A DNA stretch of 64,000 bases from Podarcis vaucheri (GCA_965113315.1 OZ220369.1), one strand, 5' to 3'. Counted from the stretch's first letter, positions 13,838-57,772 are shown. The notes: a model not told the origin generated them from the letters alone. Numbers and translations are program-made.

Positions 13838-13886
<49 letters not shown>
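13838..13886. repeat. (GA)n microsatellite
   Basis: Direct reading. Confidence 0.95.
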
Positions 13887-14873: not shown

Positions 14874-14928
<55 letters not shown>

Positions 14929-14929
14929 A
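14874..14929. repeat. (GAAA)n microsatellite
   Basis: Direct reading. Confidence 0.95.
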
Positions 14930-34930: not shown

Positions 34931-36140
34931 TCAGAGCACTCCTGACATATGGGTGTCAAGCCTCTGCTTAAAGACCTCCAAAGTAGGAGACTCCACCACA
35001 CTCCTTGGCAGCAAATTCCACTGTCGAACAGCTCTTACTGTCAGGAAGTTCTTCCTAATGTTTAGGTGGAATCTTCTTTCTTGTAGTTTGGATCCATTGC
35101 TCCGTGTCCGCTTCTCTGGAGCAGCAGAAAACAACCTTTCTCCCTCCTCTATGTGACATCCTTTTATATATTTGAACATGGCTATCATATCACCCCTTAA
35201 CCTCCTCTTCTCCAGGCTAAACATGCCCAGCTCCCTTAGCCGTTCCTCATAAGGCATCGTTTCCAGGCCTTTGACCATTTTGGTTGCCCTCTTCTGGACA
35301 CGTTCCAGTTTGTCAGTGTCCTTCTTGAATTGTGGTGCCCAGAACTGGACACAGTACTCCAGGTGTGGTCTGACCAGAGCAGAATACAGTGGCACTATTA
35401 CTTCCCTTGATCTAGATGCTATACTCCTATTGATGCAGCCCAGAATTGCATTGGCTTTTTTAGCTGCCGCGTCACACTGTTGGCTCATGTCAAGTTTGTG
35501 GTCAACCAAGACTCCTAGATCCTTTTCACATGTACTGCTCTCAAGCCAGGTGTCCCCCATCTTGTATTTGTGCCTCTCATTTTTTTTGCCCAAGTGCAAT
35601 ACTTTACATTTCTCCCTGTTAAAATTCATCTTGTTTGTTTTTGCCCAGTTCTCTAATCTGTCAAGGTCGTTTTGAAGTGTGATCCTGTCCTCTGGGGTGT
35701 TAGCCACCCCTCCCAGTTTGGTGTCATCTGCAAATTTGATCAGGATGCCCTTGAGTCCATCATCCAAGTCGTTGATAAAGATGTTGAATAAGACCGGGCC
35801 CAAGACAGAACCCTGTGGCACCCCACTAGTCACTCTTCTCCAGGATGAAGAGGAACCATTGATGAGCACCCTTTGGGTTCGGTCAGTCAGCCAGTTACAA
35901 ATCCACTGAGTGGTAGCATAGTCAAGACCGCATTTTACCAGCTTCTTTACAAGAATATCATGGGGCACCTTGTCAAATGCTTTGCTGAAATCAAGGTAGG
36001 CTACATCCACTGCGTTCCCTTCATCTACCAGGCTTGTAATTCTGTCAAAAAACGAGATCAGGTTAGTCTGACATGACTTATTTTTCAGAAATCCATGCTG
36101 ACTATTGGTGATCACAGCATTCCTTTCTAGGTGCTCACAG
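34931..36140 (-). pseudogene. CR1 ORF2, C-terminal part (reverse transcriptase)
   Basis: [46 protein letters not shown]; open to the native stop. Confidence 0.95.
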
Positions 36141-37523
36141 TTTGCTTAATGATCTGCTCCAGAATCTTCCCTGCTATTGATGTCAGACTGACTGGGCGGT
36201 AATTATTTGGGTCCTCTCTTTTCCCCTTTTTGAAAATAGGAACAACATTTGCCCTCCTCCAGTCTGCCGGGACTTCGCCTGTTCTCCAGGAATTCTCAAA
36301 GATGACTGCCAGTGGTTCTGAGATCACATCTGCCAGTTCTTTTAATACTCTTGGATGCAGTTCATCTGGCCCTGGAGACTTGAATACATCTAATCTAGCC
36401 AAATATTCTTGTACTATCTCCTTAGTTATTCTGGGCTGTGTTTCCTTTGCTGAATCATTTGCTTCAAATTCTTCAGGTCGGGCATTGTCTTCTTTATCGG
36501 AGAAGACTGAGGCAAAGAAGGCATTGAGGAGTTCAGCCCTTTCTGTGTCCCCTGTTTGCATTTCACCATCTTCTCCTCTGAGTGACCCCACTGTTTCTTT
36601 GTTCTTCCTTTTGCTACGAACATACCCATAAAAGCCTTTTTTGTTGCTTTTAACCTCTCTAGCAAGCCTGAGTTCATTCTGTGCTTTAGCTTTTCTGACT
36701 TTGTGTCTACACGTGCTGGCTATTTGTTTGAATTCCTCTTTGGTGGTTTCCCCCCTTTTCCATTTTTTGTACACATCCTTTTTTAATCTTAATTCAGTTA
36801 AAAGTTCTTTAGATAGCCACCCTGGTTTCTTTAGGCACCTTCCATGTTTTCGTCTCATTGGTATTGCCTGACGTTGTGCTTTTACTATCTCCGTCTTAAC
36901 AAACTCCCAGCCATCATGAACTCCCTTTCCTTTTAGTATTGCTGTCCATGGGATCTCACCCAGCACTTCCCTAAGTTTTATGAAGTCGGCTTTCTTAAAG
37001 TCAAGAAATTGAGTCCTAGTATGCTTGGCTGCTACTGTCCGCTGTATAGTAAACTTCAGAAGAGCATGATCACTCGCGCCTAATGATCCTTCCACATCTA
37101 CCCCACTAACCAGGTCATCAACATTGGTTAGGACCAGGTCTAAAATGGCTGTTCCTCTTGTTGCTTCTCCCACTTTCTGGACAATGAAGTTGTCTGCAAG
37201 GCCAGTGAGGAATCTGTTTGACCTTATGCTCTTGGCTGAGTTTGACGTCCAACAAATATCCGGGTAATTGAAGTCCCCCATTACTACTATCTCCCTTCCT
37301 TTTGCATGCTTGGCCATCTGTTCCAGGAAGGCATCATCTATGTCCTCCGTTTGGCTTGGGGATCTATAGTAAACTCCCACAATGAGGTCTCTGTTATTCT
37401 TCTCTCCCTTAATTTTGACCCAAATGCTCTCACTTTGGCTTTGAGGTTCTAAATCTTGGATCTCTTCACAGGTATACACACCCCTGACATATAACGCCAC
37501 TCCTCCTCCTTTCTTGTCTGGTC
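36127..37523 (-). pseudogene. CR1 ORF2, N-terminal part (APE endonuclease, linker, RT start)
   Basis: GGGVALYV, VGVYYRSP, MGDFNYPDI, LDLVLTN, SDH, KSPGPDELHPRVLKEL, NYRPVSLTS; frame ends at a frameshift near 36140. Confidence 0.95.
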
Positions 37524-40805: not shown

Positions 40806-41362
40806 TTCCGTACCATAGAAAAGAATTTCAAGAGCCAAAATAGGCATAGTGTTAAATACATCTTTGCTTTTATTGTGATGCGGGATCTGTGGCCTTTCAG
40901 AACTTGCTGGACTACAACTCCTATTATGCTTTTGCACTGGCCATTCTGGCAGGGGCTGATGGAGGTATGTGTCCAGCAACTTCTGGAGGTTATCCATTCC
41001 TGATTTAAAGGGACGGGCAACTTAGCTTTACTTTGTGTGATGTAAACACAAGTGTGCCTAGTGCTTCTGCTTGAGATTGCTGTGTTAGACACAAAGGTCT
41101 TGAGTGACATGCTAGGGTGCTATCTCTTATCTCACTTGCAAAGGCATGTGAAACTTGCCCATTCTGCTCTGCAGGGTTACATGAAAGAATGTCGTGTCAT
41201 TTCAGTCACTTTTGTGGTTCTGCAATCAGCCTTGCAAGTTTCACTTTGAGCTTCACATAAAAACGGGTGCAAAGCAACTAGGTGACAGCAGCCAAAATGG
41301 CTGAATGAAACATTTTGGTATGTGTACTTTATAGGGATTGGATGGGAACAGAATGTAACCAA

Positions 41363-41661
41363 GGCCTGATCTGCACTATGCATTTATAATAGTATCAAAC
41401 CCCTTTAAACCGTCATGTTTCCCCACAAAGAATCTTGGGACCTGTACTTTGCTAAGAGTGCTAAGAGCTAGTAGGAGACCCCCATTCCCTGCATATAGTT
41501 AAAACTGCCAGAGCTCCTTAGGAAGATGAATTGATTGTTAAGCCACTCCTGGAATTGTAGCTCTGTGAGGCAAGTAGGAGTCTCCTAACAACTCTCAGCA
41601 ACCTTAACAAACTACCATTCCCAGGTCTAAGAATGCTTTGAGTGTATGATGTGGATGCGAC
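41363..41661. mobile_element. Palindromic MITE-like repeat (same family as 7493-8784)
   Basis: Shared AAAGAATCTTGGGACCTGTA...TAGGAGAC / GTCTCCTAACAACTCTCAGCA arms. Confidence 0.6.
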
Positions 41662-41756
41662 CCACACTGGAAGCCAATTCTGAATGGGCAAGTGTCAAAG
41701 AGACCCCAAGCATATATTTTAGATTGGCTGCATGCATTCCAACTGTTTCCCAAGTA

Positions 41757-44700
41757 CAGTGGTACCCCGCAAGACGAACGCCTCGCGAGACGAAAAACTC
41801 GCAAAACGAAAGGTTTTTTTTTCGTTTTCGAGTTGCCTCGCAAGACGAATTTCCCTATGGGCTTGCTTCGCAAGACGAAGCTTGCCCCGGGGACAGCGGG
41901 TCTTCTCTTTTGAAGCAAGGGGCTGCAGGGAGATCGCTATCTCCCCGCAGCCCCTTGCTTCAAAAGAGGTCCAGGGGCAGCGGGAAGCTAAGCGCTTCTT
42001 TCCCGCTGCCCCCCGACGTCTTTTGCAGCAAGGGGCTGCGGGGAGATCGCTATCTCCCCGCAGCCCCTTGCTTCAAAAGTGGTCCGGGGGCAGCGCGAAG
42101 CTAAGCGCTTCTTCCCCGCTGCCCCCCGACGTCTTTTGCAGCAAGGGGCTGCAGGGAGATCGCTATCTCCCCGCAGCCCCTTGCTTCAAAAGAGGTCCAG
42201 GGGCAGCGGGAAGCTAAGCGCTTCTTTCCCGCTGCCCCCCGACGTCTTTTGCAGCAAGGGGCTGCAGGGAGATCGCTATCTCCCCGCAGCCCCTTGCTTC
42301 AAAAGAGGTCCGGGGGCAGCGCGAAGCTAAGCGCTTCTTCCCCGCTTCCCCCGGACGTCTTTTGCAGCAAGGGGCTGCAGGGAGATCGCTATCTCCCCGC
42401 AGCCCCTTGCTTCAAAAGAGGTCCAGGGGCAGCGGGAAGCTAAGCGCTTCTTCCCTGCTGCCCCCGACGTCTTTTGCAGCAAGGGGCTGCAGGGAGATCG
42501 CTATCTCCCCGCAGCCCCTTGCTTCAAAAGAGGTCCAGGGGCAGCGGGAAGCTAAGCGCTTCTTTCCCGCTGCCCCCCGACGTCTTTTGCAGCAAGGGGC
42601 TGCGGGGAGATCGCTATCTCCCCGCAGCCCCTTGCTTCAAAAGTGGTCCGGGGGCAGCGCGAAGCTAAGCGCTTCTTCCCCGCTGCCCCCCGACGTCTTT
42701 TGCAGCAAGGGGCTGCAGGGAGATCGCTATCTCCCCGCAGCCCCTTGCTTCAAAAGAGGTCCAGGGGCAGCGGGAAGCTAAGCGCTTCTTTCCCGCTGCC
42801 CCCCGACGTCTTTTGCAGCAAGGGGCTGCAGGGAGATCGCTATCTCCCCGCAGCCCCTTGCTTCAAAAGAGGTCCGGGGGCAGCGCGAAGCTAAGCGCTT
42901 CTTCCCCACTTCCCCCGGACGTCTTTTGCAGCAAGGGGCTGCAGGGAGATCGCTATCTCCCCGCAGCCCCTTGCTTCAAAAGAGGTCCAGGGGCAGCGGG
43001 AAGCTAAGCGCTTCTTCCCTGCTGCCCCCGACGTCTTTTGCAGCAAGGGGCTGCAGGGAGATCGCTATCTCCCCGCAGCCCCTTGCTTCAAAAGTGGTCC
43101 GGGGGCAGCGCGAAGCTAAGCGCTTCTTCCCCGCTGCCCCCCGACGTCTTTTGCAGCAAGGGGCTGCAGGGAGATCGCTATCTCCCCGCAGCCCCTTGCT
43201 TCAAAAGAGGTCCGGGGGCAGCGCGAAGCTAAGCGCTTCTTCCCCGCTTCCCCCGGACGTCTTTTGCAGCAAGGGGCTGCAGGGAGATCGCTATCTCCCC
43301 GCAGCCCCTTGCTTCAAAAGAGGTCCAGGGGCAGCGGGAAGCTAAGCGCTTCTTCCCTGCTGCCCCCGACGTCTTTTGCAGCAAGGGGCTGCAGGGAGAT
43401 CGCTATCTCCCCGCAGCCCCTTGCTTCAAAAGAGGTCCAGGGGCAGCGGGAAGCTAAGCGCTTCTTTCCCGCTGCCCCCCGACGTCTTTTGCAGCAAGGG
43501 GCTGCGGGGAGATCGCTATCTCCCCGCAGCCCCTTGCTTCAAAAGTGGTCCGGGGGCAGCGCGAAGCTAAGCGCTTCTTCCCCGCTGCCCCCCGACGTCT
43601 TTTGCAGCAAGGGGCTGCAGGGAGATCGCTATCTCCCCGCAGCCCCTTGCTTCAAAAGAGGTCCAGGGGCAGCGGGAAGCTAAGCGCTTCTTTCCCGCTG
43701 CCCCCCGACGTCTTTTGCAGCAAGGGGCTGCAGGGAGATCGCTATCTCCCCGCAGCCCCTTGCTTCAAAAGAGGTCCGGGGGCAGCGCGAAGCTAAGCGC
43801 TTCTTCCCCGCTTCCCCCGGACGTCTTTTGCAGCAAGGGGCTGCAGGGAGATCGCTATCTCCCCGCAGCCCCTTGCTTCAAAAGAGGTCCAGGGGCAGCG
43901 GGAAGCTAAGCGCTTCTTCCCTGCTGCCCCCGACGTCTTTTGCAGCAAGGGGCTGCAGGGAGATCGCTATCTCCCCGCAGCCCCTTGCTTCAAAAGTGGT
44001 CCGGGGGCAGCGCGAAGCTAAGCGCTTCTTCCCCGCTGCCCCCCGACGTCTTTTGCAGCAAGGGGCTGCAGGGAGATCGCTATCTCCCCGCAGCCCCTTG
44101 CTTCAAAAGAGGTCCAGGGGCAGCGGGAAGCTAAGCGCTTCTTTCCCGCTGCCCCCCGACGTCTTTTGCAGCAAGGGGCTGCAGGGAGATCGCTATCTCC
44201 CCGCAGCCCCTTGCTTCAAAAGAGGTCCGGGGGCAGCGCGAAGCTAAGCGCTTCTTCCCCACTTCCCCCGGACGTCTTTTGCAGCAAGGGGCTGCAGGGA
44301 GATCGCTATCTCCCCGCAGCCCCTTGCTTCAAAAGAGGTCCAGGGGCATCGGGAAGCTAAGCGCTTCTTCCCTGCTGCCCCCGACGTCTTTTGCAGCAAG
44401 GGGCTGCAGGGAGATCGCTATCTCCCCGCAGCCCCTTGCTTCAAAAGAGGTCCAGGGGCAGCGGGAAGCTAAGCCCTTCTTCCCTGCTGCCCCCCGACGT
44501 CTTTTGCAGCAAGGGGCTGCAGGGAGATCGCTATCTCCCTGCAGCCCCTTGCTGCAAAAGACGTCCGGGGGAAGCGGGGAAGAAGCGCTTCTTCCCCGCT
44601 TCCCCCGGACGTCTTTTGCAGGGTGGCCGCCATGCCGAAGTCTGCGGGCGCTGACATCAGCGCTCCCAGGCTTCGCGGACCTCTCCGCCAGCGCGCGCAG

Positions 44701-45245
44701 GCTTCGGCATGGCGGCAACCCTCCGCCAGCAGCGGCAGCGCTGCCGCTGCTGGCGGAGAGGTCCGCGAAGCCTTGGCCGGACAGCTTTTGAAGGCAGGCG
44801 GGTGGGGGGGAGCAAAGACTTTCGCCCCCGCCAGCCTTCAGAAGAGGAAGGCTGGCGGGGGGCAAAAGTCTTTGTCCCCCCTGCCTGCCTTCCCAGGGGC
44901 TTTTAAATCACCCCGGACAGCGGAGAAGTCCTCCGCTGTCCGGGGCGATTTTAAAATGCCGCCCGCCAGCATTTTAAGATCGCCCCAGACAGCGGAGAAG
45001 TCCTCCGCTGTCCCGGGGTTTTTTAAAATGCTGGGGGTGGGAAGAAAAGCCCTTGTCCCCCCCCCAGCCTTCAGAAGAGGTCCGGGGACAGACTGTCCCC
45101 GGACCTGGTCTGAAGGCGGTTTCCCTAGGAACGCATTAATTGATTTTCAATGCATTCCTATGGGAAACCGTGCATCGCAAGACGAAAAAACCCAAGACAA
45201 AGAGAATTGCGGAACGAATTAATTTCGTCTTGCGAGGCACCACTG
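41757..45245 (+). mobile_element. 3489-bp non-autonomous Tigger/pogo-like (Tc1/mariner superfamily) element with an internal tandem array
   Basis: TIRs CAGTGGTACCCCGCAAGACG / CGTCTTGCGAGGCACCACTG (18/20), TA TSD on both sides, multiple subterminal CGCAAGACGAA motifs; no transposase ORF. Confidence 0.92.
41914..44621. repeat. Tandem array of 24 x 112/113-bp double-palindrome units
   Basis: AGCAAGGGGCTG unit starts at 41914, 42027, 42140, 42253, 42366, 42478 ... 44395, 44508 (23 intervals = 2594 bp; five units are 112 bp). Confidence 0.97.
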
Positions 45246-45279
45246 TATATATACATGTAGCTGGCCTTATACTGCCTGT

Positions 45280-45426
45280 CAGTGCTCCCCCCCCTAAAAA
45301 AATGTTTAGGGGTACTCCCATTTTCCTACTCATATTGAAATACTACGCCTTAATGAGGCCAAACTTAGATTCACAAAACGTTTAGGGGTATGCATACCCC
45401 TGCGTCCCCCCAGAAAAAAAGCACTG
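45280..45426. mobile_element. ~147-bp hAT MITE (same family as 7913-8057)
   Basis: CAGTGCT / AGCACTG ends, TSD CTGCCTGT/CTGCCTGC. Confidence 0.85.
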
Positions 45427-48400
45427 CTGCCTGCTAGATGAAATAAGCAGTCACATGAGGTCTTCATGCGGATGACAGATCATAATCTTGTAGACAGCTT
45501 GGTCTATATAAACTGCAGATTGCCCATTCCCTTCTCAAGCAGACTGCTGGTTTATAAAGTTCATGAAGGCCAGAGGATATTTCTTTATGGAAGCTAATTG
45601 TTAGAGGACAGTATAGTGGTACATTGCCGTTTTGGACATCCCAGTTCACCCCAGCTAAGGAAAGGGAGCTGACATAAATGTGTGACTGCTTGGGATAGCT
45701 AAGCAGTTGGAGACAGACAGAGGCAGAATAAGAGAAAGCTGTGAGCTGAATGTCAGAAGCATGTAGGGGCACAGTGTGGCTCTCCTTGGATATGAAATGT
45801 GAGGTGAGGTAGGAAATCTGCTGACTGGCAGAAGTGTGCAGACTCATGCTGCTTGCCTCTACTGATGTTCCACTTTCATATTTCAGAATAAAATGAGGTA
45901 AAGCTAAGACTTCAAAATAAGGGCAAAGAGTATAAATCTGATTAGGGTTTTCATATTTTAGCATGTAAGTCTATCAGCAGTAAGTAGGGAGAGGGGGGAA
46001 ATTAGAATCTCCTTTATTAGCACTTTTCCAAACAGACTTCATGCAGAATTATTGCTTCTCTGAATTTTGCAGTGCAGTCCTCCAGTCTGTAGCATGTACA
46101 GAAATGCATATACTAGGGTAAAATGCATATATAGGTGAAGATAACACAAACACACATTCTAAGGGGAAATTGCTATGCAAATTTGTGTTCACATTTGCAT
46201 ACAAAATGTGTAAATTAGCATGTATTAATAGTAAAATGGTGGTGAATTTTCATGGACTTTTTGGGGGGGGGAAATCGCATACTGATTTTGAATTGTAGAG
46301 AACTGAATTTAAGATTTGAGAAATAGTGGAGTGGGGGGGGGGGAATGAGAAGCTGAAATGAACAGATTCACCCATCCCAAGAAGAAAAAAAGGATATCGT
46401 AACCACAACAACCACAAGGAAGTTCTGTCTGAGCCCTACTGAATACAATGCTGCTATATCCTGGCACTGTTCCCAGTCATTTCAATAGTTCTTTTGCAGG
46501 AGAACTTCCATGCAACTTGTGGTTTTTAAATTAAAATGTTTTTAACATTGCCATCTTCTGACTTCCAAATCACCTGTCTTTATTACTGCAACACACTAAC
46601 ATACAAAGGTATTTGTCTTGCACAACCATCATCAAATGTTTACTCTAAATACATTCCTAACATGATTTATCTAAATTGAACAACCCTTCACTTTAAGGCT
46701 TTACAATGGAAAGGTCAACATGATGTGTTCACACTTGTGTGCCAAATTTGCAGGCCCGTTTCTTCCACTGCACCCAGCAGGCAGTTGTGTAAGAAATGAA
46801 AGCATTGCATCTAGTGTACCTAGTGTGATACGTGTAAAACAACATTAACTGCATGAGCAGAAAACACTGCAGCCAAACCCATCAAGGCACCTTGATGCAT
46901 TACTATTTGTATATATAGAACATTTGAAAACCAAGCCCTAAATGTTGTCCCACATTTTCTGTCCACCAGGGAGTTCCTTGTTGTGTTCTTCTGCCTTTGC
47001 ATCATTGTACGCTTGCCTTCCATATTGATTCCTCTCCCTTCAAAGCGAATCTTTTGACATAACTGTTGCGAAGAGGAAACCTTGTCAGACTGATTATGAG
47101 GAAGCTCGTTAACCGTTCCCCCATTTGATGTGCTGGCTATAATGTTGTACAAATTCGAATGTCATAAGTGCTGGATCATGTAAAAATACTGAAAACACCA
47201 TCAAAGCAGCTGCTATTCCCTGGGTGTTTGCGCTTTGGTGAACAGGTGGGCTTTTAGAAAAGAAGTGCTCAGCAGCAAGCTGTGTGGCTATCTTCACTGC
47301 CCCCCCTCTCTGTGTGCAAGCCTTTAGACCATACTGTGGAATGCCTGGAAACATTTTAAAGTTTTATTACGGCTTTTGAAATCAACAAAGCAATTAGGGA
47401 GGTTTTTAAGCTGTATACTGGTCAATCAGATCTTCAGTCAATAGCACTCTGTAAATGTCAATAGAGTTTCTGGCTTTATAGCCCACGTCTGCATACTTAT
47501 ATTTACAGTTGCATTGTGAGAACTTGTATTTTTACAGGAATGCCTGCAAGCTCCAAATCGGATCAATATTATCACACTGAATTCCAGAACTAGAAACTAG
47601 GCACAATAATCTAATCGGTAACTGAAACACTCTGCAAGGCAATGCGCAAGTTGGATATAGCGAAAATAACACAGTTGACTGGCTTTTAATATATCAAGAT
47701 ACCTTATTTGAGTATGCAAATTCACTCTCCCTATGGGATTAGGGATAGAATAGGATACATTTTGGTAGGATAGTGTTTCTGGTTAAGTCACTGCATGGAT
47801 TGATTCTTAATGGTAGTTAGGGATGCATTTTTCTGAAAATCTCAATTTCAAACTTATCCACATTGATATTTCCCCCAATTCTCATCTTGCTCACTGATCT
47901 CAACAAGAAGCCAGTTATTTCCCCTCCAAGGTTCCCTTAAAAATATAAACCATTCACACGCATATGCATTATTATACATATACTATTGTATGCATACTAT
48001 AGACATCTATACTGTGGGTTTCTTAAAGCTACCAGACATAGAACAATGCATATAACTATGTAAAGATACTCATTTATTGATGTTTATCAAATTTTGCAGC
48101 AACAATATAGTACCACATGAAGCTCAACTTCCATAAACTGTATACAAATGTTATATAATTTATGCATTCAATTATGGGGGGTATTTCAGATCCAACAAGA
48201 ATGTGTTAGGAGTCAGCTGATGAGACCCTTCATTTCAAGAGATCCTTGGGAGAACTTGCTGGGTATGATGTCCCCAAGATAAAAATAGTTTCATGTCTGA
48301 GAAAACATGCCTTCATGGGATTTCCATCAAGAGAAATGGCCAGGGACAATGACCACATCAATCTTGTGATTTGAAATTTATGTTTATTCCTCTACATCTG

Positions 48401-57039: not shown

Positions 57040-57772
57040 ACCTTTTAATGAGGGTGAAAGAGGAGAGCACAAAATATGGTCTGAAGCTCAACATCAAAAA
57101 AACGAAGATCATGGCCACTGGGCCCATCACCTCCTGGCAAATAGAAGGGGAAGAAATGGAGGCAGTGAGAGATTTTACTTTCTTGGGCTCCATGATCACT
57201 GCAGATGGTGACAGAAGCCACAAAATTAAAAGACGCCTGCTCCTTGGGAGAAAGGCGATGAAAAACCTAGACAGTATCTTAAAAAGCAGAGACATCACCT
57301 TGCCAACAAAGGTCCGTATAGTTAAAGCCATGGTTTTCCCAGTAGTAATGTATGGAAGTGAGAGCTGGACCATAAAGAAGGCTGATCGCCGAAGAATTGA
57401 TGCTTTTGAATTATGGTGCTGGAGGAGACTCTTGAGAGTCCCATGGACTGCAAGAAGATCAAACCTATCCATTCTGAAGGAAATCAGCCCTGAGTGCTCA
57501 CTGGAAGGACAGGTCCTGAAGCTGAGGCTCCAATACTTTGGCCACCTCATGAGAAGAGAAGACTCCCTGGAAAAGACCCTGATGTTGGGAAAGATGGAGG
57601 GCACAAGGAGAAGGGGACGACAGAGGATGAGATGGTTGGACAGAGTTCTTGAAGCTACAAACATGAGTCTGACCAAACTGCGGGAGGCAGTGGAAGACAG
57701 GAGTGCCTGGCGTGCTCTGGTCCATGGGGTCACGAAGAGTTGGACACGACTAAACAACTAAACAACAACAAC
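57040..57772 (+). mobile_element. BovB (RTE clade) LINE 3' fragment
   Basis: ORF 57048-57761 with GLKLNIKKTKIM, FLGSMIT, YGSESWT, DAFELWCWRRLLRVPWTARRSN, LMLGKMEGTRRRGRQRMRWLD; (CAA)n tail; AACAAATATCAT on both flanks. Confidence 0.97.

What the first reader, a model, noticed from the sequence alone, without database searches (positions are those of the whole stretch)
41914..44621. Satellite inside a transposon that is an alternating forward/reverse concatemer of a ~56-bp half-unit
Seen: each 113-bp unit is two abutting quasi-palindromes, H1 (CAAGGGGCTGCAGGGAGAT-cgct-ATCTCCCCGCAGCCCCTTG) and H2 (GGGGCAGCGGGAAG...AGCGCT...CCCGCTGCCCC). The sequence from H1 centre to H2 centre is approximately the reverse complement of that from H2 centre to the next H1 centre, so the 2.7-kb array is (u,u')n and reads almost the same on both strands. 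It lies between intact TIRs with a TA TSD. Established: satellites can arise from MITE interiors, and (u,u')n concatemers are the product of rolling-hairpin or repeated template-switch synthesis. Inference: this family may be a mobile vehicle for strand-symmetric, cruciform-prone, CpG-rich satellites; any transcript would fold into extensive dsRNA (siRNA or ADAR substrate). I do not know whether this family has been described.
Basis: partly seen in the sequence, partly recalled or inferred. Interest (0 to 1): 0.82.

Follow-up and report, generated by a model that had tools for sequence, protein, structure and literature searches.

The report
Lizard transposon carrying double-hairpin tandem array
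A 3.5-kb non-coding cut-and-paste transposon in a wall-lizard genome carries 24 tandem copies of a 113-base unit made of two hairpin-forming palindromes; it is a real and neat example of the already known "tandem repeats inside a miniature transposon", and the array grew by ordinary head-to-tail duplication, not by forward/reverse copying.

Summary
Window 41905-44621 is 24.1 tandem copies of a 113-bp unit. Each unit is two abutting quasi-palindromes, so the array reads about 75-80% the same on both strands. It lies in a 3,489-bp element with 22-bp inverted ends (20/22), a TA duplication and no coding capacity. The proposed origin, an alternating forward/reverse concatemer made by rolling-hairpin synthesis, is not supported for the array. 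All 22 interior units carry the same arm-to-arm mismatches. Units are 96.6% alike head-to-tail, with many identical, but their arms are only about 85% complementary. Four unit types form a 5-unit (564-bp) higher-order repeat. That pattern indicates direct tandem duplication; strand symmetry follows automatically when two abutting palindromes are repeated. The rest of the interior (44622-45120) is also a chain of unrelated hairpins. Read data from three lizard species labels show element ends at roughly 10^4 copies and the 113-bp unit at roughly 10^3-10^4 copies, with a ~100-bp short form also present. One RNA library covers the family's ends but hardly the array. The scan's first readers flagged four similar arrays elsewhere in this genome; I could not check them. 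One point stays unexplained: the edge palindromes are perfect and differ symmetrically on both arms. Verdict: a new member of a known kind, the tandem-repeat-containing MITE.

The parts
41755..41756 (.). TA target-site duplication, left copy
   Evidence: Sequence. A contig of run X2 from another copy starts its match at 41755 (record 11).
41757..41778 (+). Left terminal inverted repeat (22 nt, CAGTGGTACC...)
   Evidence: Matches the right end in inverted orientation at 20/22, with 0 expected by chance.
41757..41904 (+). Left end module with five copies of the subterminal 11-mer CGCAAGACGAA (41768, 41784, 41800, 41839, 41869)
   Evidence: Summed word depth is 3.3 million in X1 against about 60-76 for unique flank contigs. 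Most family copies diverge after 41879 (loose ends).
41905..44621 (.). Array of 24.1 units of 113 (112) bp. Each unit is palindrome H1 plus palindrome H2. Unit types A, B, C and D form a 5-unit (564-bp) higher-order repeat.
   Evidence: GC is 0.63 and CpG o/e 0.68, against 0.43 and 0.30 for the window.
41905..41968 (.). First H1, 64-bp palindrome carrying allele 'a' on both arms
   Evidence: 30 of 32 arm positions are complementary.
44496..44565 (.). Last H1, 70-bp palindrome carrying allele 'b' on both arms, perfect except for the 4-nt centre
   Evidence: 97% over 70 nt; 31/32.
44552..44621 (.). Last H2 (H2'), a 70-bp 100% perfect palindrome that ends the array
   Evidence: 35/35 stem, 100%; 27/27.
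44622..45120 (.). Non-tandem interior: a chain of unrelated GC-rich hairpins. Examples are 44620-44722, 44721-44758 (38 bp, perfect), 44813-44874, 44905-44951, 44988-45012 and 45067-45117.
   Evidence: (z = -27.9). Depth rises from 18 thousand to 1.3 million towards the right end, so copies of the family share progressively more of this region.
45121..45245 (-). Right end module, including the right TIR (45224-45245) and two copies of the 11-mer
   Evidence: Depth is 3.0 million in X1. Loose ends of diverse sequence begin after 45247/45248.
45246..45247 (.). TA target-site duplication, right copy
   Evidence: Sequence.

Best explanation
This is a long copy of a very abundant, non-autonomous Tc1/mariner-superfamily DNA transposon of wall lizards. 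It has pogo/Tigger-like ends and a TA duplication. It encodes nothing and must be moved by a transposase supplied in trans (inferred). The interior of this sub-family is a chain of GC-rich hairpins. Two neighbouring hairpins (H1 + H2, 113 bp) were amplified head-to-tail to 24 copies, by unequal sister-chromatid or homologue exchange and/or replication slippage, first in single units and then in blocks of up to 5 units. The hairpin-forming sequence probably favours fork stalling and misalignment (inferred). The strand symmetry is a by-product: tandem repetition of two abutting palindromes is necessarily its own reverse complement. The array most simply descends from a two-unit ancestor, H1a-H2-H1b-H2'. 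An exchange between the two H1 copies created the hybrid H1 (left arm b, right arm a) seen in all interior units. No host function is indicated.
For: The ends, TSD and subterminal repeats are real. There is no protein-family match in any ORF of the element. The ends are about 10^4-fold over unique depth in three species labels, and joints 41811->45207/8/10 show short ~100-bp family members. A near-identical published end was classified as Tigger-like. Evidence for direct amplification: mean head-to-tail identity of interior units is 96.6%, with groups of 2-6 identical units. Identical arm mismatches occur in 22/22 (two sites) and 19/22 (one site) interior H1 copies, and H2 arms show the same 21-23/27 pattern per type. 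Unit order is ABACD | ABACD | B'CD | ABACD | B'ACD, and the best direct offset is 564 bp. The whole interior is hairpins, not only the array. The edge units are a/a and b/b while the interior is b/a. Literature on the same class names palindromes and stem-loops as hotspots for repeat-number change in MITEs (PMC3879986).
Against: No other family copy could be read, so in-situ growth versus transposition of an already long array is not resolved. Linkage of the unit to these ends at other loci rests on unchecked first-reader notes. The array length rests on the assembly alone. Ordinary exchange does not explain why the last unit's palindromes are perfect, or why the paralogous palindromes differ symmetrically on both arms. 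The copy-number figures come from summed contig word depth, which the tool warns is not a copy number.
Confidence: 0.7

Rival explanations
1. One reading: the array was built as an alternating forward/reverse concatemer of a ~56-bp half-unit, by rolling-hairpin synthesis or repeated strand switching.
For: Palindrome centres alternate every 57/56 bp. The array is 75-80% self-complementary. The last unit is a perfect u'-u-u' stretch of 126 nt. Symmetric both-arm allele differences suggest that arms are sometimes copied from each other.
Against: Alternating copying gives perfect palindromes at birth, so later mismatches should be private to a unit. Instead the same mismatches are present in 19-22 of the 22 interior units. 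Direct identity (96.6%) exceeds arm complementarity (about 85%). Variants are phased in a direct 564-bp higher-order repeat. At most, the founding palindromes could have arisen this way.
Confidence: 0.07
2. The 113-bp repeat is mainly a free satellite, or a module of another element, that entered this one copy secondarily, for example by template switching during gap repair. On this view the transposon is not its usual vehicle.
For: The unit's summed depth is about ten times lower than that of the ends, and most family copies diverge from this copy right after 41879. Contigs are too short to show linkage.
Against: First readers of four other windows of this genome independently described Tc2/MITE-type elements whose interior is an array of ~113-119-bp double-hairpin units (unchecked). 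The sequence next to the array inside the element is made of hairpins of the same style, with short shared motifs (41958-41972 against 45069-45083).
Confidence: 0.12
3. The unit number is an assembly artefact: the real locus has only one or a few units.
For: No spanning long read could be examined. Short-read contigs cannot resolve the array.
Against: The array has an irregular but orderly variant pattern: five-unit blocks, a three-unit block, and variants C* and B' each seen only twice. That pattern is hard to produce by mis-assembly. At 2.7 kb the array is well within the length of a long read. Unit k-mers are abundant in three species labels.
Confidence: 0.05
4. The hairpin array has been taken over by the host, for example as a small-RNA source, a protein-binding array or a chromatin boundary.
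For: CpG is retained (o/e 0.68 against 0.30 in the window). Hairpins are strong and partly perfect.
Against: RNA is nearly absent over the array in the one library laid. Only sub-threshold generic hairpin matches were found in Rfam. Several unit variants are CpG transitions, as expected of methylated junk. No conservation test was possible.
Confidence: 0.05

Closest known systems
Tandem-repeat-containing MITEs (DTC84 of the clam Donax trunculus, pearl/CvA of oysters, DINE-1, SGM, PERI and mini-me of Drosophila, MINE-2 of Lepidoptera), as reviewed in PMC3879986
   Same: A non-autonomous, high-copy element with conserved end modules acts as a 'cassette' around a central array of 100-200-bp repeats. 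A palindrome in the repeat is proposed as the hotspot for changes in repeat number.
   Different: Those elements have an AA target duplication, a microsatellite tail and usually up to about 6 repeats, and some are now placed with Helitrons. In DTC84 the palindrome is only 12 nt of the unit. Here the TSD is TA with Tc1/mariner-type ends, there is no microsatellite, there are 24 units, and the whole unit is two palindromes.
Xenopus MITE with lineage-specific tandem repeats (Hikosaka and Kawahara 2004, as cited in PMC3879986; paper not read here)
   Same: It is a vertebrate MITE carrying internal tandem repeats. The published model builds the repeats during replication through stem-loop formation.
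   Different: I could not compare sequences or unit structure. That model predicts unidirectional growth. Here the evidence points to block-wise unequal exchange, shown by the higher-order repeat.
Tetris / foldback-type elements of Drosophila virilis (PMC4079207) and Galileo (PMC4168063)
   Same: These are DNA transposons whose internal tandem repeats (TIR-220) also form kb-size satellite-like arrays. They are modular and often rearranged.
   Different: In foldback elements the repeats sit inside long inverted terminal arms. Here the ends are short (22 nt plus subterminal 11-mers), and the single central array is self-complementary because its unit is palindromic.
Tigger-like (pogo-group) MITEs, e.g. 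MITE_109 of Rhodnius prolixus (PMC4678618)
   Same: A TA duplication and an end beginning CAGTGGTACC.CG and finishing CGAA. Identity is 12 of the first 13 and 16 of 22 bases.
   Different: The resemblance is limited to the ends. No transposase partner was identified here. The insect MITEs are 300-650 bp with no array reported.
Rolling-hairpin concatemers (parvovirus replication intermediates; from general knowledge)
   Same: They show formal head-to-head / tail-to-tail alternation of a half-unit.
   Different: Those junction palindromes are exact copies of each other's arms. Here the arms differ in the same way in every unit, so the copying register was 113 bp direct.

Membership tests
Tc1/mariner-superfamily non-autonomous element (MITE-type, pogo/Tigger-like ends) | TA target-site duplication | tested here: met
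   TA lies at 41755-41756 and 45246-45247. Family reads diverge just after 45247/45248. This is weak on its own because the right flank is TA-rich.
Tc1/mariner-superfamily non-autonomous element (MITE-type, pogo/Tigger-like ends) | Terminal inverted repeats beginning CAGT... | tested here: met
   The 22-nt ends match at 20/22, with two hits in the window against 0 expected. They resemble a published Tigger-like MITE end.
Tc1/mariner-superfamily non-autonomous element (MITE-type, pogo/Tigger-like ends) | No transposase gene; high copy number | tested here: met
   ORFs in the element have no Pfam match and follow the repeat period. Summed depth of the ends is about 10^4 times unique depth in X1, X2 and X3 (rough).
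Tc1/mariner-superfamily non-autonomous element (MITE-type, pogo/Tigger-like ends) | Small size (under about 800 bp) | tested here: not met
   This copy is 3,489 bp because of the array. Short forms of about 100 bp with the same ends are seen as joints 41811->45207/8/10.
Tc1/mariner-superfamily non-autonomous element (MITE-type, pogo/Tigger-like ends) | An autonomous partner with the same ends encoding a DDE/DDD (pogo-type) transposase | not testable with these tools
   No eukaryotic genome collection or repeat library was available. There is no transposase in the window; the only TE ORFs are LINE RT and endonuclease.
Tandem-repeat-containing MITE | Central tandem array between conserved end modules | tested here: met
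Tandem-repeat-containing MITE | Repeat number varies among copies of the family | not tested
   There are only leads: first-reader notes of 621-1291-bp arrays in similar elements elsewhere in the genome. Other copies could not be fetched.
Tandem-repeat-containing MITE | The same repeat also occurs as long free satellite arrays | not testable with these tools
   Logan contigs are about 80-110 nt long and cannot show array context.
Satellite DNA in the strict sense | Long (tens of kb or more) arrays, usually heterochromatic | tested here: not met
   At this locus the array is 2.7 kb, inside a transposon, in ordinary interspersed-repeat surroundings.
Rolling-hairpin / alternating template-switch concatemer | Arms of each junction palindrome are exact copies, and later mutations are private to units | tested here: not met
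   The same arm mismatches occur in 19-22 of the 22 interior units, and there is a direct higher-order repeat.
Foldback element | Long terminal inverted arms built of repeats | tested here: not met
   End similarity is limited to 22 nt plus scattered 11-mers. There is a single central array.
Any Rfam RNA family (e.g. miRNA precursor) | Score at or above the family's gathering threshold | tested here: not met
   There were 0 matches at gathering. At E<=1 there were only generic hairpin matches on both strands, all far below threshold.

The most novel reading that the evidence does not exclude
In this lizard transposon family the palindromes are actively kept perfect, either by copying one arm from the other (fold-back resynthesis or quasi-palindrome correction) or by selection on the master copy. 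The family would then spread and repeatedly seed strand-symmetric, cruciform-prone CpG-rich arrays across wall-lizard genomes. The hint is that paralogous palindromes (H1a against H1b, interior H2 against H2') differ at 2 to 6 positions per arm, yet the edge copies are each perfectly self-complementary, and the recombinant interior copies are exactly the expected hybrids.
Probability: 0.2. Interest if true: 0.6.

Novelty: new member of a known kind. Interest (0 to 1): 0.35.

Why it matters
It adds a vertebrate (lacertid) Tc1/mariner-type example to the known link between miniature transposons and tandem repeats. It is an unusually clean one, because the unit is nothing but two hairpins and the variant pattern records how the array grew. 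If the family really carries such arrays to many loci, it would be a natural system for two questions: how hairpin-forming DNA drives repeat expansion, and whether palindromes are homogenised arm-to-arm. For this locus alone, nothing points to a host function.

Tried and rejected
1. I searched for other copies outside the window. Exact-pattern scans for the H1 core and for the TIR in metagenome, prokaryote-genome and viral collections found nothing. These collections do not hold lizard DNA, so this says nothing about rarity.
2. The scan's own index searched by sequence was blank.
3. Rfam gave no family at gathering threshold. The sub-threshold miRNA-like matches on both strands are generic hairpin matches and I rejected them as membership.
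4. I rejected coding capacity. The 139-199-aa ORFs over the array and interior recur with the repeat and have no Pfam match.
5. Literature searches for a description of this family in Podarcis or other lacertids, and for its end sequence, found no description. They returned only the general class and one similar insect MITE end. Dfam and Repbase could not be consulted.
6. The insertion's presence or absence in the sister species could not be settled. An X2 contig stops at 41753 with 52 unaligned letters, but the letters are not shown, and the joint list is truncated.
7. I considered that H1 is merely the junction created by duplicating one long palindrome centred on H2. This is formally the same two-unit ancestor, so I did not keep it as a separate rival.

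Full report
WHAT IS THERE. Window 41906-44621 is a tandem array of period 113 bp, 24.1 copies, 95% matches. Anchoring on the centre of the first palindrome gives 24 units spaced 113 or 112 bp apart. Each unit holds two abutting quasi-palindromes. H1 has a stem of about 29-32 bp around a 4-nt centre. H2 has a stem of about 25 bp centred on AGCGCT. Their centres alternate at 57 and 56 (55) bp. The array therefore resembles its own reverse complement. Ungapped identity is up to 0.75, and 200-nt inverted arms are 79-80% complementary. Two units fold as single-stranded DNA at -102 kcal/mol, z = -16.7.

THE ELEMENT AROUND IT. A 22-nt end motif occurs exactly twice in the 64-kb window, inverted, at 41757-41778 and 45224-45245. 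The two copies match at 20/22, and none is expected by chance. TA flanks both ends. The 11-mer CGCAAGACGAA occurs seven times in the window, five in the left end and two in the right, against 0.3 expected. ORFs across the element recur with the repeat and match no protein family. A published 'Tigger-like' MITE of Rhodnius prolixus has a very similar end: TA, then 12 of the first 13 and 16 of 22 bases the same (PMC4678618). I therefore read the element as a non-autonomous Tc1/mariner-superfamily transposon with pogo/Tigger-like ends. No transposase partner could be sought with the tools at hand.

READS. I laid contigs from three DNA runs with different species labels, plus raw reads from one RNA run, on 41300-45700. 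Run X1 matches the unique flanks without a single difference, so it is probably the source species. X2 differs by 1-4%. Unique contigs have depth of about 57-76 in X1. The two end modules sum to 3.0-3.3 million in X1 and X2, and 0.32-0.39 million in X3. The tool warns that this is not a copy number. As an order of magnitude it suggests about 10^4 copies of the ends.

Depth falls stepwise into the right interior: 1.3 million, 0.7 million, 97 thousand, then 19 thousand. Copies of the family therefore share nested amounts of that region. Joints 41811->45207/8/10, with 3-7 filler letters, occur in all three DNA runs and in the RNA. They show short members of about 100 bp with the same ends. Contigs matching the 113-bp unit are present in all three species labels. 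Summed over the array bins they correspond to roughly 10^3-10^4 units per genome, so this locus holds under 1% of them. Contigs are too short to show whether the other units also lie inside such elements.

The scan's first readers noted four more 'MITE / Tc2-type element with an interior array of ~113-119-bp double-hairpin units' elsewhere in the same genome. These are unchecked leads, not evidence.

HOW THE ARRAY GREW. An alignment of the 24 units shows 11 variable columns and four main unit types. Their order is A B A C D | A B A C D | B' C D | A B A C D | B' A C D | D' | terminal unit. This is a five-unit, 564-bp higher-order repeat, and 564 is also the best direct self-offset. Interior units are on average 96.6% identical head-to-tail, and groups of 2 to 6 units are 100% identical.

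The two arms of each palindrome are less alike. H1 arms differ at the same two outer positions in 22 of 22 interior units and at a third position in 19 of 22. H2 arms are only 21-23 of 27 complementary, again with the same differences within each unit type.

Rolling-hairpin or alternating strand-switch synthesis makes every junction palindrome perfect at birth, so later mismatches would be private to single units. The opposite is seen. The asymmetries therefore predate the amplification, and the amplification copied in a direct register of 113 bp and of multi-unit blocks. This is the ordinary behaviour of tandem repeats under unequal exchange and replication slippage.

The formula '(u,u')n' adds nothing on its own. 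Any tandem repeat of two abutting palindromes is its own reverse complement, and each palindrome seems to extend into its neighbours.

THE INTERIOR IS ALL HAIRPINS. The non-tandem part, 44622-45120, is also a chain of palindromes with different sequences. Examples are a ~100-bp hairpin at 44620-44722, a perfect 38-bp palindrome at 44721-44758, and others at 44813-44874, 44905-44951, 44988-45012 and 45067-45117. Region 44383-45245 folds at -373 kcal/mol, z = -27.9. The two hairpins that were amplified are thus just two of many in the cargo of this sub-family. This argues against a special concatemer origin for them.

THE EDGES, AND WHAT REMAINS UNEXPLAINED. The first H1 carries one allele ('a') on both arms. 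The last H1 carries another ('b') on both arms. All interior H1 copies are b-left / a-right hybrids. The simplest history starts from a two-unit ancestor, H1a-H2-H1b-H2'. An unequal exchange between the two H1 copies created the hybrid, and the segment from one H1 centre to the next then multiplied.

The last H2 is a 70-bp, 100% perfect palindrome. Its left arm differs from the interior left arm at six columns, and each difference restores complementarity to its own right arm. Type-C units combine an interior-type left arm with an H2'-type right arm. Paralogous palindromes thus differ by 6-11% while some are each perfectly self-complementary. That calls for arm-to-arm templated correction or fold-back resynthesis, for selection for hairpins in the master lineage, or for recent origin. 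One of the three symmetric H1 sites is a CpG transition that could recur by chance; the others are transversions. With one locus and few sites this is only a hint. Another first-stage note (s1-855075) had pointed at these edges. I confirm the pattern but read it as compatible with plain unequal exchange between two pre-existing palindromes.

EXPRESSION AND FUNCTION. The one RNA library laid was read to about 12% and comes from a species label other than the likely source. In it the family's ends have 224-399 reads per bin on both strands, the right interior 8-165, and the array at most 1.2. Relative to DNA depth in the same species label, the array is about ten-fold under-represented. Poor reverse transcription of GC-rich hairpins may contribute to this. 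There is no support for a long double-stranded transcript, and small RNAs were not examined.

Rfam gives nothing at gathering threshold and only generic hairpin matches below it. CpG o/e is 0.68 in the array and 0.73 in the right interior, against 0.30 for the window. This fits a young element. Several unit variants are CpG transitions, as expected of methylated repeats.

COMPARISON WITH WHAT IS KNOWN. MITEs with central tandem repeats are a described class: DINE-1, SGM, PERI, mini-me, MINE-2, pearl/CvA, DTC84 and a Xenopus MITE. In that literature a palindrome or stem-loop in the repeat is proposed as the hotspot for copy-number change, and the ends are seen as a 'cassette' for the repeats (PMC3879986). 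Tetris of Drosophila virilis shows such repeats growing into satellite-like arrays (PMC4079207).

This element shares that architecture. It differs in four ways. It is a TA/Tc1-mariner-type element in a lizard. It lacks the microsatellite tail. It holds 24 units rather than up to about six. Its unit consists entirely of two palindromes. I found no description of this family in the paper library. Dfam and Repbase could not be consulted.

VERDICT. The feature is real and the anatomical description was accurate. The proposed rolling-hairpin origin is contradicted for the array. The 'mobile vehicle' idea is plausible but unproven here. It is a new member of a known kind and of modest interest. The symmetric allele pattern of the palindromes is the only part that might repay further work.

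Noticed in passing
window 34931-37500 (- strand): Two adjacent ORFs of a LINE retrotransposon. One matches reverse transcriptase (RVT_1, 4e-27) and the other the endonuclease (Exo_endo_phos_2, 3e-10).
   Followed up: partly
window 57048-57761 (+ strand): A 237-aa ORF with no Pfam match, followed by an (AAC)-rich tail. From memory, its C-terminal residues look like the 3' end of a BovB/RTE-type LINE, common in squamates. I did not test this.
   Followed up: no
window 45269-45430: Another very high-copy short repeat lies about 20-35 bp from the element's right end (sequence start near 45281). Summed word depth is about 1.0 million in X1 and X2. It begins CAGTGCTCCCC and has internal direct repeats. 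It is probably a different MITE, so the element sits in a nest of interspersed repeats.
   Followed up: partly
window 41447-41740: The left flank is moderately repeated (summed depth 37-65 thousand) and looks SINE-like. Truly unique flank starts only before about 41446.
   Followed up: no
window 41757-41778 / 45224-45245: The terminal 22 nt resemble the end of the 'Tigger-like' MITE_109 of the blood-sucking bug Rhodnius prolixus (12 of the first 13, 16 of 22 bases; PMC4678618). [quoted passage not shown] This is a resemblance only.
   Followed up: no
window 41825 / 41879 (family level, from reads): Many family copies turn back on themselves after 41879. The loose-end consensus there is the reverse complement of the preceding 11-mer region. 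RNA reads show a 41825/45224 opposite-strand joint. The commonest family members therefore seem to be short foldback-like MITEs.
   Followed up: no
window 13838-13886 and 14874-14929: Perfect microsatellites: (GA)24.5 and (AGAA)14.
   Followed up: no
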